Numbered from the stretch's first letter, positions 5,025-58,291 are shown. The stretch is 64,000 nucleotides of DNA from Asterias rubens (GCF_902459465.1 NC_047080.1:1240001-1304000); one strand, 5' to 3'. The notes: generated by a model not told the origin, from the letters alone. Numbers and translations are program-made.

Positions 5025-5094
5025 TAGTTGCGATAATCGTAACCCTCCATCCTCCGACCGTCGGGAGGATGGAGGGTTACGATTATCGCAACTA
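5025..5094. mobile_element. 70-bp almost fully palindromic mini-element with target-site duplication
   Basis: Arms tagttgcgataatcgtaaccctccatcctcc(c)gac, near-perfect; flanked by direct repeat ccctggcag at 5016-5024 and 5095-5103. Confidence 0.8.
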
Positions 5095-5434
5095 CCCTGG
5101 CAGTGGCTTAACAATATACTTGTTTTTGAAAGTTAAATGCACTCAATCTGTTAAAGATTTTATTTTAAGATAATGTCTACCTGACCAGGTGAGAATTGGG
5201 TAGCAAACTTAGCTGACACTTGTTTAGTGACACCCATAATCATAATGCATTTCATTTAATTAAATGTTCTCATTCCTACTGTTTTGTTGTTGTTGCTATT
5301 TTCAGGGTTCAACTTGTAGCTAGGGAGTTCCTCCCTCCTGACCTGACTTGACCTGACCTCATCTAGTGTTGTAAAAAGGAGCTGCTCAATTGTTTCATCA
5401 GGATTGAGATGAACAAAGATTTTTCTGCATCAAG

Positions 5435-7560
5435 ATGCGGTTTATTGAGAATCCTGAGTTAAGAGAATGGGTGAAAGAAAACTTGTGCAGGACAGTCTTT
5501 CAAAAGGTTAGTTGATTAAAAAAAAGAGTTTTCTAAATTGTCTCTTGTACCTCTCCAGACATGTTCAGCTTATTTCATCTTTTTCCCCCAAAGAATGACG
5601 TTGAAAACTAGGGGTTTAGGGCTAAGAGTTAAGTTTGATGTAAAATTGTATACAATGGTACACCGGTACAGACTGCCTTCACAGCACAAGTTAGCTCTAC
5701 CTACAATTTTATAGTTTTGGTTGGTTTTTGTGGGGGGGTTTTCAGGAAAATATAGGGATTTGAAAACTAAAAATTTGTACGTTTGTGTGTTTTTTTACTT
5801 TCTAATTACAGGCACATGAGTTGGCTGTGCAAACTGGTTGTGAAGTACTGGTCAAACTACAGGATGGAGCTAACCAATCCGGCCAGTATTATGCCACCAG
5901 GGCCCTTCATCTTTTGTACAAAGGGAAAGGATTGACCAAGCAACCATGGGAGGTGACAGTATCAGGGATCACTGGACTTCCAGAAACCGTCTTGGTGGAC
6001 AAAAGCAGCCAAAGTGATGGATGGAAGGAGGATGGGGGTTCTAAGGAGGATGCAGTGGAGGTTGTGTCGGAAGAGATGACCTCATCTTCATTAAACTTGG
6101 GGGACTACCAAGTAACATCTGCTTCAAGTGTCCTCAATGGTCAAAGTGTTTGCTGTGTGGATAATGCCCAAGCTGTAACTAGAACTGAAGAGAGTATAAA
6201 GGGATCTGTTATTGTGAAAGAGGAACATGAACTTGGACAGTTTGCAGAGCCCTGCTCCTCGTCAATCCATTCACATAACCATGATTTTGGAATATTTAGA
6301 GTACTTTCAGAAAACAAGGGAAGCTTTCCTGATCAGTATCAACCAAATGATGAGTTGAACTCTCTTTGTGATTATAACGGTAATGATAATGAAAGTGGTC
6401 TGACTTTAGCCAAGTCTGATGATACAATGAATCAAACTCTGTTCCAAAGTCAAATTTGTGCAGCCTCTGTAGGAACAGATCAAAACCAAACTGAGATTCA
6501 TTGTGAGGAAACTGAAACAGTAGTGCCAACTCCTAGGCCATACAAGTGTGGAATCTGTAGCAAGACATTTGGTAGTATCCAGATACTGAGCCGGCATGCC
6601 CAGATAAACCATGGAATGGACAGGCAAATGAGTTTCTTCTGTGATGTGTGCGGGCAGAGCTACAAGTTGGCACAACATTTACAGCGCCATATGCACATGC
6701 ATCGCACTGTGATGCCTTACATTTGTTCTGTATGCCATAAGGGTTTCTTCAATGGGACAAGCTTGATCAAACATGAGAAGGTTCACCAAAAATTCAGTGA
6801 CAAGGTTTGCACAGTATTTCACTGCCAGATCTGTCTAAAATATTTTCCGCAGGTGTCTGAGCTGGATGAACATGCAAAGCAGGTTCATGGAAGCCGAAGA
6901 TGTGCTTCGGGTGCTCCATCATCTCAGCATGCTTTCCCCACACCAACAACTGATGAAATCACAGAAGGAGACACTCAAGATGTTTTAGAAGAAACCTTTC
7001 AAAATGATAACTTTCTCTCCGACACAACTGCCCTGCCTGGCGGTAGTTTAAGACCAGTGTCTCCACAAGTCATTCTTGACTCCTCCGAGAATTCTGGCTC
7101 TCCACATTCCAAAACAGAACATAGCAAAAAGAAAGATGACAACCAAGAAACTACCCCTGGTAGCCCCATCAGCAGCATCGCTGATACTTTCAGCAATGCC
7201 CCAAACACAAACTCAGGGATTCGTCTGGCCTTTAAAAGAAACATTGGACTGATATCAAGCGGGAGTCAATCCTCCAACTTGTTCAGATTGAATAGACATA
7301 ATTGCAATATCTGTGGGAAGAGTTACAAGTACAACTTCTCTTTAAAGGAACATCTTCTCACTCATGCCAGTGTGCCTCAGTTTTCTTGTAAGATTTGTGG
7401 AACTAAGTTTACCCGAAGACGTCAGTTAAGAGATCACATGTTCCGACACAGTGGATTGTACCCCTACCATTGTGAGATTTGTGGCAAGGGATGTATTCGG
7501 CCATCTACACTGAAAAGACACCAGACAGAACGTCATCGGATGCTCAATGAGGAACTTTAA
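5435..7560 (+). CDS. C2H2 zinc-finger protein (7 fingers, 4+3) with N-terminal degenerate MADS-box-like domain, about 606 aa
   Basis: Coding exons 5435-5506 (MRFIENPELREWVKENLCRTVFQK) and 5812-7560, joined in phase 0 by a GT-AG intron. Seven CxxC-x12-HxxxH(H) units; acidic low-complexity linker. Confidence 0.9.
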
Positions 7561-7753
7561 TTACAATCATTGTCAAACTCTTCTCTTGTTGTTAAACTCG
7601 ATGGGCTCAGGTTTTGTTCTTTTTAGTATAGATCTTTATCATGCTGCCTCCATCTTGGTCATGTTCCTTGTATCGAATAACAATAATGAATGCTAATAAT
7701 CGTTATGCAAATAGGAACCAGACTCTTTTGTTCTTCAAGCCTCGGAATTGTTA

Positions 7754-7880
7754 GGCCAAGTCGAAACGGCGACTTCGGCTACAACTACGGCTAGATCGCA
7801 CACGTCTGCTATTCTTCAACACTGGTAGACGCGCTGATCTAGACGTAGCTGTAGCCGAAGTCGTCGTTTCGGACACGGCC
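7754..7880. mobile_element. PIF/Harbinger-like (Tourist-type) MITE just 3' of the zinc-finger stop codon
   Basis: Long inverted repeat ggccaagtcgaaacggcgacttcggctac...gtagccgaagtcgtcgtttcggacacggcc flanked by TTA on both sides (7751-7753, 7881-7883). Confidence 0.75.
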
Positions 7881-9759
7881 TTACATTGATATTAATGGGG
7901 ACATTGCAAGATGGCTGCACCATGGTAAAGGTCTATTGGGAACAAGATCCTAGTGTGTGATTTCATCTTTGAAGGGTCAAATGCTAGCATGAAAGTGCAC
8001 TCACAGGTATTATAAAAATCATTGTTGCATTTTAGTCTAAAATCCTACTTAATATTATGGAGTCATATATTTGGTAAAACTAAATCTGAAAACAGTGCTG
8101 AAAATGGTGCATGGTTTGTCACATGTACACTGCGCTATTCTGTCAGCTCTACAAATCCTGTGAAAGACATTCAATAATTGTTTTTTAATTTAATGCAAAC
8201 AACCCCTAGGACCAGATGATACGATTTTTTTTTTTATTTATTCACAAATGTGTGTGACAGTTTATCAGACAGGTAATGAAAAATTTACTCAAAAGTTTTA
8301 CATCTTTTCCAACATTATTAAGCTATTTAACAAAATGGGCATTTATGATTGCGAATAAAAGAGTAGTAACTCGGTCTTTGGGGCGGTTAAAGCCTTGCAG
8401 GTTCGTGGGTGTGTGATAAAGGACATTGACCTTCACCTCTGTCCTTTATTGCACCACCACTACTCTCCCAGTTTTAAGCAACCAGTTGTGACCTTGATGC
8501 CACTCTTTTAGTCTCTTGTTTATTTATTTATGTATTTATCAATGTATGTATTAATCAACAGTTTTTTTTTCAGTATTATCAGCTTGTTTCTGATTGGATA
8601 GTTCGCTGTTATCAAAAGAGATTGTACGGGTAGTAATTTATCTGTTTCGGGGGGGGGGGGGGGGCCGGCTCCCTTCTTTTTTTTCTTTTACTTGAGGACT
8701 GAAATGCAGGGTTCTCAACAATTACATAAAGGTGAAAAAAGTGGGGTTTGGGGTTTTAAATTTCTTCCTTTCTTTTTTTTCGGGTGGGAGGGGGGTGGGT
8801 TGGGGTAATTTTGGGTTACAGAAGTTCTCTCTAACTTGTCACTGGGAAAAGCTTTGTAACTGACCAAATTATAAGTGTAGTGCAGCATTATAATTTCTTC
8901 TTTCTTGTCCTCTCTATGCTGTTTTCATTGTTTGGCACACTATGGTCTTGTCTTATGACTGGCTCACACACAACTCTCTGTGTATGATGTCACTCTTCCC
9001 ACCACAAACAAAAGTTCAATGGGTTTACAACAAGGCCAAGGTAGAATTTCTTAAACCAATAAGTGCAGTATTATAAAGTAATGGATTATGTAGCCATCAT
9101 TTGAATTGGAAATTAATTTGAAAATGAATAAATTAATATATTATACAAAGGTCTCAATTTGTATTGTGGGTTTCTTTTCAATGTAAATACACTAAGAGAA
9201 AATGTATTATATTGGCACACAGGCACTAGTAGTGCTAATGTGATGGCATGAAATATTGTATAGTGTGGTTTTAAACAAAATGAGTAAATACTGTTAATAA
9301 TACAAGTTGTCACACAGAAAAACATGTGTATGCTTTTTATCTAACAAACATCAAATATACAAAACACAACTCAAGATCTTTGCCCCCCCCCCTTAAATGT
9401 CTGGTTACCCCATTGAGCAAAAGTGGCCTTGACTTTTCGATTGGAAAGTGTCTCTGTCCTTACTCTATGGTGTGCCAAAGTGGGACTTGTATGAATCGGT
9501 GTGCCATAGTCATTAGCAATAATACCTACAGCATGTCTGCTGTATTATGGTGACATTACAGTGGAAAACAGACTTGTGTGGTGTTAAGCTACAGTTATAG
9601 TGGCATTTTGACCTTTGGGGTATGGTGTGCGAGTGCCGTGATCGAGCATTGGTAGAAACACTGTACCACGCGCAGGTGTACGGTATACTGCCAAGCTCTA
9701 AAATACCATCCAGTCAGAATTCAAGTCCAAAGGTAACCATTCCTTTAGCAGTGAGCAAG

Positions 9760-12700
9760 ATGTTCTTCAAGGGCTCAACAACTTGTCTTCTGTTTCTTAG
9801 CTTAGTCTGTGTCCAGATCCACATTTCACATGAGGAGCTGAGTACGGACGTGGACGAGGCCAGAGAGTTTTTGGCAAACTATGGAGCCACGGCTAAGGTG
9901 GTGTACTTTGCAAGTTATCTGGCTACCTGGTCATACTCTACTAACATCACCGATTATAACCAGCAAAAAGATGTATGTATTCTTATTTATTCGTTCAAAA
10001 TGTGTTTTTTACAGATCACAGACTGTCCCTTGCTGTACTATAAGACCATGAAACCCTTGATAAATGTTCATAAAAGAGCTATATAGAGCTTTTATTCCTG
10101 GTCGGGGTTGACTGACAGGCACGTTAGATACAAATCTGACATTAGAGATCGCACTGTCTGATTTTTTAAAACTTGTCATATTATATAAAAACTTGTTCAG
10201 CTGCTATTGTACCTCTTGAATGCATGCATGACACAGTTTCCAATTTGACCAGGGGTGGATTTCACAAAGGTAGTTCTAACTAAGAGATAGGACCAGTCCT
10301 AAGTTAGGACCAGTAACTCATCCTAACTTAGGACCAGTCTTATCTCTTAGCATTGCCTAGGACTAGTCCTAAGTTAGGACTACCTTTGTGAAATCCACCC
10401 CAGTCTTGCCTATCAGAAAGTTCATGGAATGCAAGGTCATGTTGACCTATTCAGTCTTGGTTGGCAAACTGGTTTATGGGCAGTTGTGGTTGTGTCGGTG
10501 TGTGCCAGTGCATTATCAATCGTGAAAATGGGTGGGATAGCTAGTTCGCACTTATGAATCTTCATATACTGAGTTGATGGGTTTTAAATGAGAAAATAAA
10601 TTGTTCGGGTTAATTTTTCAGTTGGAAGCCGGACTAGTCGCAGCCGCCTTCGACAGGGAAGCCTATGAGAACGCCACCAAATTTGACGAGACAGGTTTTC
10701 CAGATGACATTAAGAGACAACTTAAGAAACTCAAAGACATTGGATCTGCTGCATTGGAGCCTAGCAAAGTTGAAAGGGTAAGATATATTGCATTAACTAC
10801 GTGGGTTTTTGTATACTTGTTTTCAACTTCATCTCCTATTAAAATTGTGATCAGAACCCGGGACTAACTTTCAGGGTCCGGGCAGGCATTATTTCCACAC
10901 AAAAAGGATTTCCCCTTTCATTTTGTGTCAAGGGCAAAAGAGCAAGGTCGCTTGACTTTATTCGGACAAAGTGAAACTCAAGTCCAATCAAAATGGACAA
11001 GAAAAAGTGGGGCGATTTCAACTGGTGTTGTTTCACTTCTCAAAAAATTGCTTCAACTGTACCGTAATTTAGTGTTCACTTTCTCAATGGTATCTGTTTT
11101 TTATAGTACAATGAATTGACCAGCACCATGTCTGGAAATTACGGCTCTGCTTCGGTATGTCGACCGGATAATTCAAATGAATGCCTACAGATAGAACCCG
11201 GTATGCCCACAGTAACTAATACTTCCTTTATATAATTATTAATTTTTGTATAATTTAAAGGCAGTGGACACTGTTGGTAATTACTCAAAATAATTATTAG
11301 TATAGAACCTTTCTTCATGACGAGTAATGGGGAGAGGTTGATGGTCTTAAACATTGTGAGAAACGGCTCCCTCTGAAGTGCCATAGTTTTCGAGAAGAAG
11401 TAATTTTCCACGAATTTGATTTCGAGACCTCAGATTTAGAACTTGAGGTCTCTAAATCAACCATCTAAACGCACACAACTTCGTGTGACAGGGGTGTTTT
11501 TCTTCTTCATTATTATCTCGCAAGTTCGATGACCGATTGAGCTCAAATTTTCACAGGTTTGTTATTTTATGCATATGTTGAGATACAGCAACTGTGAACG
11601 CTAGTCTTTGACAATTACCAATAGTGTCCACTGCCTTTAACAACAATGGGTCACATTGGGAACTTTCCATAACACGTGTTTTCAAATTTTAATTGCATGA
11701 TGCTTTCTTATCAGGTTTGGGTAAAGTCATGGCTACCTCTGAAGACTGGGAAGAGCTATTGTGGGCCTGGCAAGGATTCCGAGATGAAGTCGGGATACCA
11801 AACAAACCACTCTACAGAGAGTATGTGGCACTGGCCAATGAAGCTTCTCGTCTCAACGGTACGTTTAGGCCGCGTCCAAAATGGCCGTTATGGCTACGGC
11901 TACTGTTGCTCAGGATATTATAGTCCTAGCGGCCTTATACTTTCGTATTATACTACAGTATCTGTGTACAGAGGAAGGGCTACTCAGGAGGTTGCTTTTA
12001 CATGTACATGTAGTTCAAAGCCCGCGGTGACTCGAAGTAAAGGAAGAAATGTTCACTCTAGACTTATATGAAGAGCATTTTGCAGAGCACTGCTAGCTTT
12101 ATTATAATGATCTCCGTTGCTGTTTTGGGGGCAACGATGACACTAAATATCCACCGGGAAAGTAAGGTATCTTGCAATGATATAATTGATTTATGCACAC
12201 AATTGCGATTTACTAAAATAATGTGTATTTCATTCTAGGTTTTTCTGACATGGGCGATTACTGGAGATCTGAGTACGGGGGTGATACCATTGCGCAAGCG
12301 TATGAGCTTTATAATCAGATCCTACCATTGTACAAGCAGCTTCATGCCTACGTCAGACGCATCATGAATACCAAACACAGCGATCACGTGGATCTAACTG
12401 GACGTATCCCAGGCAACCTACTCGGTGGATATGGCTAACATTTTTATTTTCATCATAAAGAACATAATATGTTTGTAAAGTAAAAGATGTCCAATTATCC
12501 ATCTCAGTTGAAGCATTTCAACGAACTAAATAAAATGATTCGTTGTGCTATCTTGTGCAATAATGTATCATTGCTGCACAAAGTATACCGTAACCGGTAT
12601 TAATCTAACCTATTTAGGTTCCCGATAGGCGACATTTTTCAAGCAACAACTGGGTTCGGCTTAGAGCCGTAACCAGCCTTTTTCTCGCAAGGTATTTTAA

Positions 12701-39400: not shown

Positions 39401-42400
39401 CTGTAAGCCTAAGCCATGGTTTCGAACATGCATGCAGTTCACAAACCTGGTGAGTGCAGTCTGGGGCACAGTATCCAGTGAGATAAAAACTATTAGATGT
39501 AGGAGGTACGGAGAGGTTTGGTGAGTAGGTGGCTCCAACTTCTAAGATACCGGCATCGTGAGGTCTTAGAAATGGCGTGTAGTGAAACCGGATTCCAGAG
39601 CTGTCCAACACCCCTAAATGAGCAAAAATGAGTAGAATTTTGTCATTTCATCAATAAACATTTGAGTGAATCGTTGCTTTGTGTTGGCCAAAATATTATT
39701 TTACAACGGTTTAAGTGGTTTGTGCTTGTGTGTGATCAGTTTGATAATTTTCTTCCTCCATGGAAGGGGTGCAGTCCGTAGGAAAGACCTTTTGATTGAC
39801 AACATGGATAAGATTAAGAAACAAAAAGGACGTCTGTTTTTCGCCTATTACTAAGATATATCTGAGCCCGTTAATTGACTTACGACCGTAGGCCTTATCT
39901 TCAACATGCCTTCTACTTTACCACCCCCCCCCCTTTATAAATCACCCTTGCCCCGCCCCTTATCTACCTTCTCTGTGTCTGAGGTTATTGTAATGAACTT
40001 GGAGCATGACGTAACTGGACTTCCCAGATCCACCAATCGGCACGCCGGCCTCTTTCGGGTACGAAAATGCCTGCCATATATGAGAGATAACTGCTATTAC
40101 TCCATCGTCATCATAACCATTTCAAAAACTTTGTTACATCTTGGAAATTGACTTTATATTGTTTTAAATTGTTTATTTTTATGTAGGCCTTTATTAACTC
40201 AGGTTCGTTATGGAGTTCCGCAAAAAGAACTATCATGTAGGTTTGTTTGTAAATAGACTCTGTGTTAGGCCGTATCCGAACTGTCGACATCTAGGACTGG
40301 TGTTAAGGGTATTGCTAAGGACCATATTAAGCTAAGGACGTCATATACTGCAACCATGGAGGTAGAAATAGACTACCTCCATGCTGCAACGCACGTGACG
40401 CAAAAAGTAAATCCATAGCTAGCCGTAGCTTCATCAACCGCCCATTGGCACGACATTATGCTGGACCTACCCACCCCCTAAAAACATCTTTAAGTGGTCA
40501 TTAAAATGGGCCGGAAATTTAGAAAAACGCAAGGGGTAATTTCAGCATTGTTATCCAATTTGGGTCAAAAAATTTAACAATCACAATGGGTAAGTCCACA
40601 TTTTTGTCTAATTTGGGCCCCAAATTTTCTTTTTAAACAAGCGTTGAGATGCAATCGAGTGGTGTTAGATTATGTTTTGCTCACCGTTGCACCCATTGCC
40701 CATGCGCCAATGACTCTCTTACATGGCTCCAGCTCAGACGGTTGATCTTCATCCTCGCACTCACCGTTGTAGTCTGGTACGTCGACCCCTTCTGGAACGA
40801 CACAATGGAATACCTCCATGTGGTGGACGACATCTTCGTTGCCAGGGGTGACCACTGACTCGTACTAAATATATACCACGATTTAATCACATGTAAACGA
40901 TTAAGAACGTATTTTGGGGGGAGTTGGAAGGTGAAAGGCTTTATTAAAAATGGAGGTCGACCCCTCAACATGACTGCTCGTCGGTTAAGACAACCAACAT
41001 GAACATTAATCATTGCTATAGTTCTTGCGGCCAATTTTTGCAAGGTTGACCAAGTCTTCTTCAACGAATGTGCTATATTTCTTGCAGATTGCTTGCATTT
41101 AAATGTTTGTTTAATTTTTAATATAGCATTTAATAGGCATACCTTAATGATGTGATGAATATCTTCAACATCCGGGAACTTTCTCACTCTGCACCAATAC
41201 GTAGTTACTTGGTTAGGTATTTCGGTCTGAATGAAATTATAAATAAATTTCATATCAATTAATTTGATTTAAACATTTTATTGTTTACTTTTTACATACA
41301 GTGCACTCCATTTACACTGACATCAAAGAGATTTTATGCAACTCAAAATTGTACTATTTCTTTTTGCGTTTTGAAATGATTGATCTACAAAATATTGTGT
41401 TCATCAAACATCGTTGCCTGATAATTTCTTCTCAGCATTGATAAAATAATCATCGTATTCTATCTGGGAGTCTTAAGTTACATGTCTGCCTGCAGCATAT
41501 TATTTCACTCTGTCGGTTCTCGTTCTCTGTTTTTCTATTTATCTTATTCTTGGTCTCAAGCAGTGTTTTTTCTAAAGTGGTAACATCTGACAGGTGATAT
41601 CAATGCACGTGTACAGTGATGTCCACAAAGGCACGAAGCAAGGATAGATGTTTCTATGAAGGTTTCATTTTAGTGGAGGCTGATGCTAGAAAAAAACAAT
41701 TTCAGAGGTACATCTTATCCGAAACGGAGCGTCTTCAAGGACAAGTGACTGCTCCAGACAATAGGGCAATAATGTTTCAAGATGTTTTATGCGGTATTGG
41801 ACCATCGATTGATACATTCTCAAGTGTTCGCTAAATCAACTGGTTTGATAGTGATTATTCTTTGTTCGTGATGTCCATAAATTACTGTAGTTTTTCATTA
41901 AATTCTTGGGATGCACTTAGGATGTACAGGCGCATCACCTTCTAAGATCTTGGCAGTTTGAAATTGATTATTTTCTGTGGGACAAAAATATTTTAGGGAG
42001 AATGTAAAACAAGGAAGCTCTCTCAAACGCTTGTGATCATCCGATAAAAAGAGATAATCTGTTTGCAAATTGTTATTGAATTAATGATTGGTATGTTGCG
42101 GCTCAATTTCGGTAAATGGCAGCTTTTTCATAAGATGTAATGTTAATTTTCTAGAACGGGTTAGCCCTTGTATAATACAAGTTCTACTTACAAAATATAG
42201 AACGGGTTAGCCCTTGTATAATACAAGTTCTACTTACATTGTGCATGGTAATATCTGCAGATTTGACATCTGACGGTACAGGCGGTGCTCGTCTTTTACT
42301 CTTTAGAAGCTGGACCCGCCGACTAGCTAGATCAGCATAATCTGGATTGATAAGTCCCGATGAGATCGTGGAGTGGTTCCCCCGGAGATAGATTAAATCC

Positions 42401-56159: not shown

Positions 56160-58291
56160 TTAAAACGACTTCTTAAATTCAAATAGTGGTTTTGTCTTCT
56201 CTTTGTGGATTAAACCGACTTTACTTGAAACCTTCTTACAGCCAGAAACTGAAAACATTGGCCAATCTTCTGGGATGTAAGTCATCTGATCTGCCACCCA
56301 CTCTAATCGCTCCTCTGTGATTGTTAAGTTGTTTCTACTTAGGCTTTGTTTTGCACACTCTTTAATGTGAGATCTTTCAAGGGGGAGGAAGGGGATACGA
56401 ATGAAGGCCCCTGGTGGTAACCATGTCCAGAATGGGTCCTGCTTGTCGAGGCTTGCTACAAGGTGCTTCCAGGGTTCCTGCCAATTAGGGTGTGGGAGTG
56501 TCAGAGACTGACGATCTTGTCCTCGCTTCATATTCACTACGAGGAAATCACTGATGGATTGCGAACCAATCAATGTCATAATAATGATGACTTTGAGATG
56601 TTGAGACTGCGCTGGCGAGTCTTGGGTGTCGAGCTGTGAGAGAGTTTGGCCGAGTGTTTGAATCAAATCCTGGGGAATGTCATCTCGAAGCTCATCAAAG
56701 ATGAAAAAAGAAATGCAGCATCTTTTGTCCTCTTGCATAGGTCTGTTTACCCAATCTTGAAGAATCTTCATGTATATTTCTTTCGACTGAGTTGTCTCTG
56801 ATCTTAAAAACAAATCAACACTCAATAGGTTAATGCAAGGCTCTTTCTTAGTATTACTCGAGATGCTCTCTGCTAGTATGTCCGCAGTAAAGCTCTTACC
56901 TACTCCAGAACTGCCATGGAAGAACATAATAAGAGGTTTGTTGCTACCAGATTCTCCAGATGCATCCAGGGTGTCCAAGATAAAATTCATTGCAACAGGC
57001 TGCCCAACAAGATTTCTTTGAAGTTCATTTTTGACATGAGAAATGTTTATCTTTTGACACTTTTCACTAGTACTAAAGAAAGGCACAAGGCAACCAGATG
57101 GTGACTTTGAGCACCAAACCAGTATTGTTATTGCAAGCAGAAACAACACAATGATGCATGTGAGAAAGCAGCAACAAGTTCCTAGGATACCACGAGACAG
57201 TGTCTCTTCAGGGTGGTCTTGCTCTAAGATGCCGCTGTAACGATCCGCTTTGCTAAGATTCCTTCCCGGTTTACCATCTTTCCTGGTTTTTCGTTGGCCT
57301 CGATTGCGAACTGTGGGGTCAAGAGAACCAGGATCAGCTATTTCAGTGCTTCCAGGGGTGCCACTGTGAAGTTTATCAGGAGTATATTTTCCTCTGCTAT
57401 TTTGAATTCTCATTTCTGGTGATGTCTGTGTTACTAACGAGACATTCTGATCTCTACCCAGTCCGCCTCGCGGTGACAGAGTTGCGGCTTTTCTCTCTGA
57501 ACCTACTCCTCCACCTCTTGTGTCAGCAAAAGATTTGTACTTTGAGGGACTTGGAGATCCTCTTCTTGAACTTGTGCTCTGGGTCTCATCTGATGGTAAG
57601 GAGTAGCAACGCGTCTCCTGAAGACAGACTGTCTTTTGTCCTGAAGGAGAGTAGAAGACAAGAGCTCTGGACTGACGATATACTGAGGAATCAGGAGACT
57701 GGCCATTTGGCAGAACAATGTCTCTGGTTGTTGGTGAAGTACTCAAACTCTGCAATGAAAAACAGGGACAAAAATTTGTTGTATAAATTAAATGCAATGC
57801 TAAACTTCTTTTTTAATTTTTGTTTTATTATGAATCTAACACGATTGCCACAACATTTCCTGATGAAAAAACTTTGTTGGAAATTGAATTCACCTCAGGA
57901 TTTCTAAACCCTCCCCACCCCCAACAAAATATAAATAAAAACGTCAACAGGCAATGAGAGGCCACAGATTTTGTTAGCTTAGAATTATATACTCCTTGAA
58001 CGATGACTGAGGTTCGTTCTGCTGTCATCTCCACGTGTAAATGATTGCTGAACAAAACTCATAAAATCATAGTTTTAACTTTAAGTTTTAGGAGTAAGAA
58101 TTGTAGTTCTCCCTTACCCCTGGCTTGTTTTGGTTGTCATTGTGCCATGTGAGAGCCAAGCATTCGTTTGGTGGACTGCCTTGTGCTGATGAAGGTAGCA
58201 TGAGAACCGGGGAGTTTGGCATGTCCCTCTCTTCAAGTGCCTGCACTGGTGGAGGTGTGTTCCTTGGACTGCGATCGTATGGGAGAAACAT
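56160..58291 (-). CDS. TOR4A: Torsin-family AAA+ ATPase with long N-terminal low-complexity region and transmembrane helix (torsin-4A-like), about 587 aa
   Basis: Coding exons 58118-58291 and 56160-57749 (phase 0). TM ILGTCCCFLTCIIVLFLLAITILVWC; Walker A HGSSGVGKS; Walker B FFIFDE; PFLPLE and C-terminal SGCKKV torsin motifs. The start codon is inferred. Confidence 0.82.

What the first reader, a model, noticed from the sequence alone, without database searches (positions are those of the whole stretch)
5429..7560. Degenerate SRF-type MADS-box domain fused to a C2H2 zinc-finger array
Joining the short exon missing from the ORF track gives (IK)MRFIENPELREWVKENLCRTVFQKAHELAVQTGCEVLVKLQDGANQSGQYYATRAL. 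This aligns with SRF IKMEFIDNKLRRYTTFSKRKTGIMKKAYELSTLTGTQVLLLVASETGHVYTFATRKL without gaps through the KAxEL...TG..VL core (17 residues between FIxN and KAxEL in both). The basic DNA-contacting residues (GRxK arm, KRKxG) are lost, while the dimerisation half (KAxEL helix end and beta-hairpin) is kept. Established animal MADS proteins are SRF and MEF2, neither with zinc fingers. Inference: a MADS fold repurposed as a dimerisation module, analogous to BTB/ZAD/SCAN on other ZF proteins, possibly able to heterodimerise with or sequester SRF/MEF2. It may define an unrecognised transcription-factor family.
Basis: partly seen in the sequence, partly recalled or inferred. Interest (0 to 1): 0.8.

Follow-up and report, generated by a model that had tools for sequence, protein, structure and literature searches.

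The report
SRF-derived MADS domain on zinc-finger protein
This starfish gene encodes a seven-finger C2H2 zinc-finger protein whose first 80 residues are a divergent SRF-type MADS domain that has lost its DNA-contacting parts and probably serves for pairing, and it belongs to an unannotated family found in echinoderms and hemichordates.

Summary

**Gene model.** The window is Asterias rubens. The exon at 5435-5506 is spliced to 5812 in transcript contigs from three studies. The 606-aa product equals the NCBI model 'zinc finger protein 287-like'.

**Evidence that residues 1-81 are a divergent MADS domain:**
- Pfam SRF-TF is the top hit but falls below its cut-off (21.8 against 26 bits).
- A 27-member family profile finds SRF in the PDB at E 3e-4, and 16 of its 17 hits are MADS proteins.
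- The AlphaFold model (pLDDT 85) matches SRF best, with TM 0.61-0.66 and VIA-align Z 7.6 against 3.7 for the best unrelated chain.
- hhalign links the family, at 96% probability, to a second starfish MADS-like family that does pass Pfam's cut-off.
- The phase-0 intron between K and A is at the same place in the starfish SRF gene, in the paralogue and in a hemichordate member.

**What the domain has lost.** The N-terminal basic arm is absent and most basic helix residues are replaced.

**Pairing.** A homodimer model scores 0.68 against 0.00 for the best control. This could reflect the model's memory of solved MADS dimers.

**Distribution.** The family occurs in asteroids, ophiuroids, echinoids, crinoids and hemichordates. 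I found no paper describing it.

**Not tested.** Dimerisation and loss of DNA binding are inferences, not measurements.

The parts
5306..5434 (+). 5' untranslated part of the first coding exon. An upstream non-coding exon of about 80 nt or more lies outside the stretch laid.
   Evidence: Transcript contigs run from about 5304 to 5504, with further unlaid letters in the 2129-nt contig of X8. An AG at 5304-5305 follows a pyrimidine run, and an in-frame TGA sits at 5405-5407.
5435..5506 (+). Coding exon 1, M1-K24. It encodes the first half of the MADS-like domain, corresponding to SRF M148-K171.
   Evidence: It ends at a GT donor in phase 0.
5507..5811 (+). Phase-0 intron of 305 nt with GT..AG ends. 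It lies at the same codon boundary as the intron in the A. rubens SRF MADS box.
   Evidence: The joint 5504(+2) to 5810(+2) appears in three runs. SRF ..GIMKK|AYELS.. compares with ..TVFQK|AHELA.. here.
5812..5982 (+). A25-P81. It encodes the second half of the MADS-like domain (end of helix, two strands) and a family-specific extension (helix 54-62, strand 71-74, VSGxTGLP motif).
   Evidence: AlphaFold2 model at pLDDT 84.9, invariant columns and fold matches.
5983..6546 (+). Poorly conserved linker, about residues 82-269.
   Evidence: It is 12-21% identical to the echinoderm relatives other than the crinoid (5%), against 51-77% for the N-terminal domain (38% in the crinoid).
6547..6888 (+). 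C2H2 fingers 1-4 (residues 270-291, 301-321, 329-349, 362-383).
   Evidence: Pfam zf-C2H2 at 81.4 bits with 7 stretches and the regex map.
7303..7536 (+). C2H2 fingers 5-7 (residues 522-542, 550-570, 578-599). This is the best conserved finger block.
   Evidence: It is 61-82% identical to the asteroid, ophiuroid and echinoid relatives compared, and 27% to the crinoid.
7558..7560 (+). Stop codon TAA.
7561..8510 (+). Probable 3' UTR, interrupted in the contigs by a high-copy repeat at about 7626-7950.
   Evidence: Contigs run to 7657 and resume at 7861-8510. Depth is 4,000-65,000 over 7548-7949.

Best explanation
The gene encodes a C2H2 zinc-finger transcription-factor-like protein whose N-terminal 81 residues descend from an SRF-type MADS domain.

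The domain keeps the MADS fold: a long helix, a two-stranded hairpin and a short second helix. It also keeps the parts that make the MADS dimer. It starts at the Met that corresponds to SRF M148, so it lacks the basic N-terminal arm. Most of the basic DNA-contacting helix residues are replaced.

Most likely it now works as a homodimerisation module, or a module for pairing with its paralogue. It would bring two finger arrays together while the fingers read the DNA. This is the role that BTB, SCAN or ZAD domains play on other finger proteins.

Shown here: the splice, the protein, the homology and the phyletic spread. Inferred: dimerisation, loss of DNA binding by the MADS part, and DNA binding by the fingers.
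For: **Gene model.**

**Sequence.**
- Pfam SRF-TF is the top hit for this protein (E 1.3e-4).
- It is matched by 23 of 27 family members, with best E 3.2e-5.
- A profile of 27 members hits SRF in the PDB at E 3.2e-4, up from 0.037 with a 4-member profile. Sixteen of its 17 hits are SRF, MCM1 or MEF2.

**Bridge family.**
- Intronless starfish MADS-like ORFs pass Pfam's cut-off at 36 and 31.8 bits.
- The same ORFs score 32.7 and 28.8 bits to the family profile.
- hhalign gives 96.1% probability, E 3.6e-9.

**Structure.**
- The AlphaFold2 model has pLDDT 84.9.
- The top 31 Foldseek PDB rows are all MADS proteins. SRF aligns at TM 0.61-0.66 and rmsd 2.3 A over 65 columns.
- An exhaustive VIA-align search gives SRF Z 7.6, MEF2A 6.1 and SEPALLATA3 5.5. 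The best unrelated chain scores 3.7.
- In the AlphaFold DB clusters, most of the 30 rows listed carry MADS or SRF names and none carries a rival fold name.

**Gene structure.** A phase-0 intron between K and A lies at the homologous codon in four genes: the A. rubens SRF gene, this gene, its paralogue, and Ptychodera flava P0032. The starfish MEF2 intron lies elsewhere.

**Dimer.**
- The two-copy model scores ipSAE 0.68, with best control 0.00.
- The three runs agree in at least 89% of contacts, and partner pLDDT is at least 62.
- In the tool's calibration the mark was reached by 21 of 30 solved homodimers and 0 of 23 solved single chains.
- Strand 37-39 pairs with itself and the helices cross at residues 21-24, as in MADS dimers.

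**Loss of DNA contacts.** There is no arm. Helix net charge is +1 against +8 in SRF.

**Selection.** The domain is 51-77% identical to the asteroid, ophiuroid and echinoid relatives compared, while the linkers are 10-26% identical.
Against: - The Pfam score is below the curated cut-off (21.8 against 26 bits).
- Individual Foldseek E-values are only about 0.01-0.3.
- VIA-align Z 7.6 is in a range the tool calls common for best hits, although here it stands well above the next unrelated rows.
- The homodimer pass may reflect the model's memory of solved MADS dimers. The tool's calibration on eukaryotes without older solved relatives is weak.
- The former DNA-facing helix stretch (LREWVKE.LRK) is itself highly conserved in the family. 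It may therefore still bind something, possibly nucleic acid.
- Several basic residues remain (R10, K14, R/K18-19, K24).
- No experiment bears on any of this.
Confidence: 0.65

Rival explanations
1. The MADS-like domain is still a DNA-binding domain with changed specificity. On this reading the protein reads DNA with both a MADS dimer and the zinc fingers.
For: The fold and dimer geometry are kept. The helix stretch that faces DNA in SRF is almost invariant across the family (LREWVKE.LRK). It retains R10, K14, R/K18, K19 and K24.
Against: The N-terminal arm is absent, because the protein starts at the residue equivalent to SRF M148. From established knowledge of the SRF-DNA structure, this arm makes the minor-groove contacts. 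By alignment, the positions of SRF S162, K163 and R164 are E, N or variable, and L. Net helix charge is +1 against +8, and acidic residues E8, E11 and E15 have been introduced.
Confidence: 0.15
2. The domain pairs mainly with other MADS proteins and modulates or sequesters them. Candidate partners are SRF, MEF2, or the other starfish MADS-like proteins found here.
For: The dimer-forming half of the MADS domain is the best conserved part shared with SRF (KA.EL..TG..VL). The genome holds several further MADS-like genes that could be partners. From established knowledge, plant and yeast MADS proteins work through combinatorial dimers.
Against: The interface residues differ a good deal from SRF, with 26% identity overall. 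The homodimer is already predicted with high internal confidence.
Confidence: 0.12
3. The likeness to MADS is a chance or convergent resemblance of a small alpha/beta domain, and the domain has an unrelated origin.
For: The score is below Pfam's cut-off. Foldseek E-values exceed 0.01. Small helix-hairpin folds recur.
Against: Independent lines agree:
- the sequence profile;
- profile-profile comparison to a family that passes the cut-off;
- fold searches in which MADS proteins fill the top ranks;
- identical intron position and phase with SRF in three lineages.
Confidence: 0.04

Closest known systems
SRF (serum response factor), type I / SRF-type MADS-box family (Pfam PF00319 SRF-TF)
   Same: - It is the best sequence and fold match.
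- The alignment from M148 through KA.EL..TG..VL to ..ATR.L needs only a short gap in the hairpin loop (about two residues).
- The secondary structure has the same order of helix, two strands and helix.
- The predicted dimer has the same geometry.
- The phase-0 intron lies at the same codon boundary as in the SRF gene of the same genome.
   Different: - There is no basic N-terminal arm.
- The basic helix residues are mostly replaced, giving net charge +1 against +8.
- The score is below Pfam's cut-off.
- The region after the hairpin is a family-specific extension, not SRF's.
- The domain sits at the very N-terminus of a protein with seven C2H2 fingers.
- The family is restricted, as far as found, to echinoderms and hemichordates.
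MEF2 (type II MADS-box)
   Same: It has the same fold (Z 6.1) and a second helix right after the hairpin.
   Different: - Sequence scores are lower (E 0.03-0.1).
- MEF2 has LCDCE where this family and SRF have TG.(Q/E)V.
- The starfish MEF2 intron is at a different position, before QVTF.
N-terminal oligomerisation domains of C2H2 finger proteins (BTB/POZ, SCAN, ZAD)
   Same: It has the same position at the N-terminus of a finger array. A self-association role is predicted. A conserved domain is separated from conserved fingers by fast-evolving linkers. The family has expanded in one lineage, with many Amphiura paralogues on one chromosome.
   Different: The fold and origin are unrelated. This is a likeness of role only, and that role is inferred.
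Intronless MADS-like ORFs of A. rubens (C8:12610171, C20:10650212; relatives P0061, P0062)
   Same: These are the closest relatives of the N-terminal domain outside the family. hhalign gives 96% probability. They share ..TVF.KAHEL...TG.EVL.. and part of the extension after the hairpin.
   Different: They keep the basic SKRKR stretch and pass Pfam's cut-off. They have no intron in the box and no C2H2 fingers. Their C-terminal region is different and unannotated.

Membership tests
MADS-box / SRF-TF (PF00319) | Score to the Pfam model at or above the curated gathering cut-off (26 bits) | tested here: not met
   The protein scores 21.8 bits, E 1.3e-4. Of 27 family members, 23 match at E <= 1, with best E 3.2e-5; that call does not report their bit scores against the cut-off.
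MADS-box / SRF-TF (PF00319) | MADS fold: long helix followed by an antiparallel two-stranded hairpin | tested here: met
   The AlphaFold2 model (pLDDT 84.9) has H7-32, E37-41 and E48-52. SRF aligns at TM 0.61-0.66 and rmsd 2.3 A and at Z 7.6 over 70 residues.
MADS-box / SRF-TF (PF00319) | Dimer through antiparallel helices and a shared four-stranded sheet | tested here: inconclusive
   The model supports it: ipSAE 0.68 against best control 0.00, with 37-39 pairing with 37-39 and 21/24 self-contacts. This is a prediction only and could come from memory of solved MADS dimers.
MADS-box / SRF-TF (PF00319) | Basic N-terminal arm and basic helix face that contact DNA (GRxKI..., ..TFSKRK..) | tested here: not met
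   The protein starts at the equivalent of SRF M148, with an in-frame stop upstream in the same exon. TFSKRK is replaced by VKENLC, and net charge is +1 against +8.
MADS-box / SRF-TF (PF00319) | Binding to CArG-type DNA sites | not testable with these tools
   This needs EMSA, PBM or DAP-seq.
SRF-type (type I) rather than MEF2-type MADS | Closer to SRF/MCM1 than to MEF2 in sequence and gene structure | tested here: met
   SRF scores 23.6 bits, MCM1 21.1 and MEF2 about 17. The intron position and phase are identical with starfish SRF and differ from starfish MEF2.
C2H2 zinc-finger proteins (PF00096) | C-x2-C-x12-H-x3-5-H units above Pfam's cut-off | tested here: met
   The protein scores 81.4 bits against a cut-off of 25.2, with 7 stretches. 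Seven units are mapped.

The most novel reading that the evidence does not exclude
Ambulacrarians may have a previously unseen third branch of animal MADS proteins alongside SRF and MEF2. It would comprise this finger-fused family, the intronless basic MADS-like ORFs, and a MADS plus PHD-like gene. Its members would pair with each other, and perhaps with SRF or MEF2, in a combinatorial network like that of plant MADS proteins. The finger-fused members would recruit MADS partners to finger-specified sites, or titrate them.
Probability: 0.15. Interest if true: 0.8.

Novelty: new variant of a known kind. Interest (0 to 1): 0.62.

Why it matters
From established knowledge, animals are said to have two kinds of MADS-box factor, SRF and MEF2, and neither is joined to zinc fingers.

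This work finds a third, SRF-derived lineage that is old enough to be shared by echinoderms and hemichordates. It has given up the DNA-contacting parts of the domain and sits at the head of C2H2 finger proteins.

It would be a clear natural case of a DNA-binding domain reused as a pairing module. It adds a new N-terminal domain type to the finger-protein repertoire. It also flags genes that current annotation names only 'zinc finger protein ...-like' in sea star, sea urchin and acorn worm, all model systems for developmental gene networks.

Tried and rejected
- **First AlphaFold2 run.** With only four sequences it gave pLDDT 54.5 and was not used for fold search.
- **Designed armadillo repeats.** With the 4-member profile, the top PDB rows were designed armadillo-repeat proteins (4rv1, 4hxt), through many summed weak repeats of one 26-residue stretch. 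They vanished with the 27-member profile and are artefacts.
- **Other weak Pfam hits.** DUF5893 (best E 0.0023, 8 of 27 members) and TPM_phosphatase matches were set aside as weak and partial.
- **Repeat proteins in the library search.** Long repeat proteins scored through many weak stretches: P0005, P0047 and P0049, the last a bacterial Calx-beta protein. They are not family members.
- **NRF1 fold match.** NRF1 at Z 5.8 has rmsd 11.6 A and was not taken as meaningful.
- **Own-genome search.** The family profile found only this gene and one paralogue.
- **Relatives outside Ambulacraria.** None appeared at E <= 0.001 in the 1.84-billion-protein library. This does not prove absence.
- **Literature.** Four searches gave nothing on such a family.
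- **Earlier scan notes.** They held only this same finding and one unrelated bHLH note.

Full report
**What is there.**
- The window is Asterias rubens, G000:C20:1240001-1304000.
- On the + strand, a 72-nt coding exon (5435-5506) starts with ATG and ends at ..CAAAAG|GTTAGT. The long open frame resumes at ..TTACAG|GCACAT at 5812 and runs to TAA at 7558-7560.
- The join gives a 606-aa protein that is letter for letter database protein P0001, named 'zinc finger protein 287-like [Asterias rubens]'.
- Contigs of three public runs from three studies carry the joined form. It skips 305 bases with GT..AG ends, in contigs of 1.2-2.1 kb that continue through the whole coding region to 7657.
- The same contigs start at about 5304-5306, just after an AG acceptor, and one carries about 80 further letters from an upstream exon.
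- An in-frame TGA at 5405-5407 lies inside this exon.
- Pfam finds seven C2H2 fingers (81.4 bits). They lie at residues 270-383 (four fingers) and 522-599 (three fingers).

**Is the N-terminus a MADS domain? Sequence evidence.**
- Pfam SRF-TF is the best family for the first 64 residues: E 1.3e-4 and 21.8 bits, with residues 4-38 on profile positions 2-36. This is below the curated cut-off of 26 bits.
- Sea-star relatives from Acanthaster, A. amurensis and Patiria share a strongly conserved block of about 81 residues.
- A profile of this block, searched by HMMER against 1.84 billion representative proteins, found 53 proteins at E <= 0.001.
- The named ones come from:
  - Amphiura filiformis, with many paralogues on one chromosome;
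  - Lytechinus;
  - Antedon;
  - Ptychodera, Saccoglossus and Glandiceps.
- The few long repeat proteins in the list are artefacts.
- Nearly all full-length members carry C2H2 fingers, from 1 to 11.
- Of 27 members, 23 hit SRF-TF at E <= 1, with best E 3.2e-5. No other family is hit by more than 8.
- A 27-member profile searched against all PDB sequences gives SRF at E 3.2e-4, MCM1 at 0.0019 and MEF2 proteins at 0.03-0.1. Sixteen of its 17 hits are MADS proteins.
- With the 4-member profile SRF stood at only 0.037. The signal grows as diversity is added, as expected for true relatives.

**A bridging family.**
- A search of the starfish genome with PF00319 found SRF (C1) and MEF2 (C11).
- It also found intronless MADS-like ORFs on C8 and C20 that pass the cut-off at 36 and 31.8 bits, and a broken copy on C11.
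- These ORFs score 32.7 and 28.8 bits to the finger-family profile, more than SRF itself at 21.3 bits.
- hhalign of the two family alignments gives 96.1% probability and E 3.6e-9 over 51 columns.
- The finger family is thus tied to bona fide Pfam MADS members by an intermediate.

**Structure.**
- With the 27-sequence alignment, AlphaFold2 gives a confident model (pLDDT 84.9, pTM 0.73). It has helix 7-32, strands 37-41 and 48-52, helix 54-62 and strand 71-74.
- The first 31 Foldseek rows against the PDB are all SRF, MCM1 or MEF2. SRF is best at probability 1.00, TM 0.61-0.66, rmsd 2.3 A over 65 columns and 26% identity. The E-values are only 0.014-0.3.
- An exhaustive VIA-align search of 48,161 chains puts SRF first: Z 7.6, 70 residues, rmsd 3.1, with model residues 1-71 on SRF 148-219.
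- MEF2A follows at Z 6.1 and SEPALLATA3 at 5.5. Unrelated chains start at 3.7.
- In AlphaFold DB clusters, the first row is a sea-urchin-type entry that is 47% identical, probably a family member inside a merged gene model. Most of the remaining rows carry MADS or SRF names, and the rest are unnamed or named for another part of the entry.
- Language-model features also point to MADS clusters, at a score the tool treats as a lead only.

**Gene structure.**
- The starfish SRF gene has a phase-0 intron inside the box: ..TGIMKK|gt..ag|AYELST.. .
- This gene has ..RTVFQK|gt..ag|AHELAV.. at the aligned codon.
- The paralogue has ..SIFQM|..|AHKLSV.. at the same place.
- Ptychodera flava P0032 has ..RAVFKK|gt..ag|GHTLAS.., with a 58.7-kb intron.
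- Fragments in the protein library that read through the donor (..IFQK followed by V) show the same boundary in other members, whose species I did not look up.
- The starfish MEF2 intron lies elsewhere, before QVTF.
- An intron falling by chance on the same codon boundary in a 57-codon domain is unlikely, at roughly 1 in 170 by my estimate. This line is independent of the protein comparisons and points specifically to an SRF-type origin.

**What has changed.**
- By the gap-free alignment, M1 corresponds to SRF M148. The basic arm GRVKIK is therefore gone.
- SRF's ..KLRRYTTFSKRKTGIMKK.. has net charge +8. It is replaced by ..PELREWVKENLCRTVFQK.. with net charge +1.
- The positions of SRF S162, K163 and R164 are E, N and L. 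In the wider family they are usually E, a variable residue and L.
- From established knowledge of the SRF-DNA structure, the arm and this basic face make the DNA contacts.
- The segment KA.EL..TG..VL and the hairpin are kept. After the hairpin there is a family-specific extension ending in VSGxTGLP.

**Pairing.**
- A two-copy model scored ipSAE 0.68 (runs 0.71, 0.67, 0.68) against 0.00 for the best of three controls.
- The runs agree in at least 89% of contacts, and partner pLDDT is at least 62.
- In the tool's calibration the mark was reached by 21 of 30 solved homodimers and 0 of 23 solved single chains.
- The tool warns that on eukaryotes a pass can come from memory of solved relatives.
- The interface is symmetric. 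Strand 37-39 pairs with itself and the long helices run antiparallel with self-contacts at residues 21 and 24. From established knowledge, this is the arrangement in MADS dimers.

**Selection.**
- Against four asteroid, ophiuroid and echinoid relatives (P0002, P0006, P0013, P0023), the N-terminal domain is 51-77% identical.
- The finger blocks are 28-60% and 61-82% identical, and the linkers only 10-26%.
- The crinoid member P0039 is lower in every block, at 38%, 36% and 27%, with linkers of 5-8%.

**Reading.**
- The best-supported account is an SRF-derived MADS domain that has been kept for its fold and pairing surface while losing its DNA contacts. It is placed at the head of a finger protein that reads DNA through its fingers.
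- I put homology to MADS at about 0.9, and the dimer-module role at about 0.65.
- The main rivals are that the domain still touches DNA, or that its real partners are other MADS proteins.
- The first rival draws on the very conserved helix stretch LREWVKE.LRK with five remaining basic residues.
- Neither rival is excluded.

**Comparison with what is known.**
- The family is not a member of PF00319 by Pfam's own threshold and lacks the DNA-contact features. By fold, profile, bridging relatives and intron it is a divergent offshoot of the SRF-type MADS lineage.
- Functionally it resembles BTB, SCAN or ZAD domains on finger proteins, by position and predicted role only.
- Four full-text searches found no description. 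Database names are generic, and the precomputed Pfam lists for these proteins hold only finger families.

**Surroundings.**
- The paralogue lies outside the window at C20:1202899-1203549 on the other strand, head to head, about 42 kb from this gene.
- Within the window the other long open frames belong to unrelated genes: an ACE-like exon at 9622-10086, a copper monooxygenase-like exon at 40681-41253 (-), and a torsin-like gene at 56160-57797 (-).

Noticed in passing
outside the window: G000:C20:1202899-1203549 (-), loci L012/L015: A second family member lies head to head with this gene, about 42 kb away. It has the same K/M|A intron and C2H2 fingers. It is near-identical to the A. amurensis protein P0003 and related to Patiria P0004.
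   Followed up: partly
G000:C8:12610171-12610284 (L002), C20:10650212-10650295 (L004), C11:5610139-5610246 (L007): These are intronless MADS-like ORFs that keep the basic SKRKR stretch and pass Pfam SRF-TF at 36 and 31.8 bits. The C11 copy has an internal TAG. Relatives on small ENA and JGI contigs (P0061, P0062) add a conserved C-terminal region with no Pfam hit. They are neither SRF nor MEF2.
   Followed up: partly
G000:C15:14104607-14104684 and about 14105370 onward (L006, L019 108-185 and 871-1395): This is a further SRF-type MADS gene with an intact basic helix (..FLENKLERQKTFSKRKSGLLKK|AKALHRLTGAKVFIQVV..) and the same phase-0 intron. A Cys/His-rich stretch that looks PHD-like follows. 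That reading is by eye and was not tested.
   Followed up: partly
window 7548-7950: A high-copy repeat sits in the probable 3' UTR, with contig depth of 4,000-65,000. It contains a long inverted repeat at about 7755-7880. Transcript contigs break here.
   Followed up: no
window 5030-5100: A near-perfect palindrome of about 70 nt lies upstream of the gene. It is also raised in depth in one run (108 in X9), so it is probably a small repeat.
   Followed up: no
window 5429-5434: The untranslated codons just before the start read I-K in frame, so the DNA spells IKM.FIEN as in SRF's IKMEFIEN. This could be a relic of the SRF arm or just a Kozak context. It is not conserved in the paralogue (NI) or in Ptychodera (PR).
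   Followed up: partly
Amphiura filiformis proteins P0008-P0020, P0011: The family is expanded in the brittle star, with many paralogues on one 64-Mb chromosome. Most have only two fingers and varied C-terminal parts, and P0011 carries BEN domains (52 bits).
   Followed up: partly
AlphaFold DB entry A0A7M7PLQ2: This 723-aa 'Brix domain-containing protein' has the family domain at residues 461-549 (47% identity). It is probably a merged gene model hiding a family member.
   Followed up: no
window 9622-10086 (+), 40681-41253 (-), 56160-57797 (-): The neighbouring open frames match peptidase M2 (ACE), the copper type II monooxygenase N-terminal domain, and torsin. They are unrelated to the finding.
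   Followed up: no
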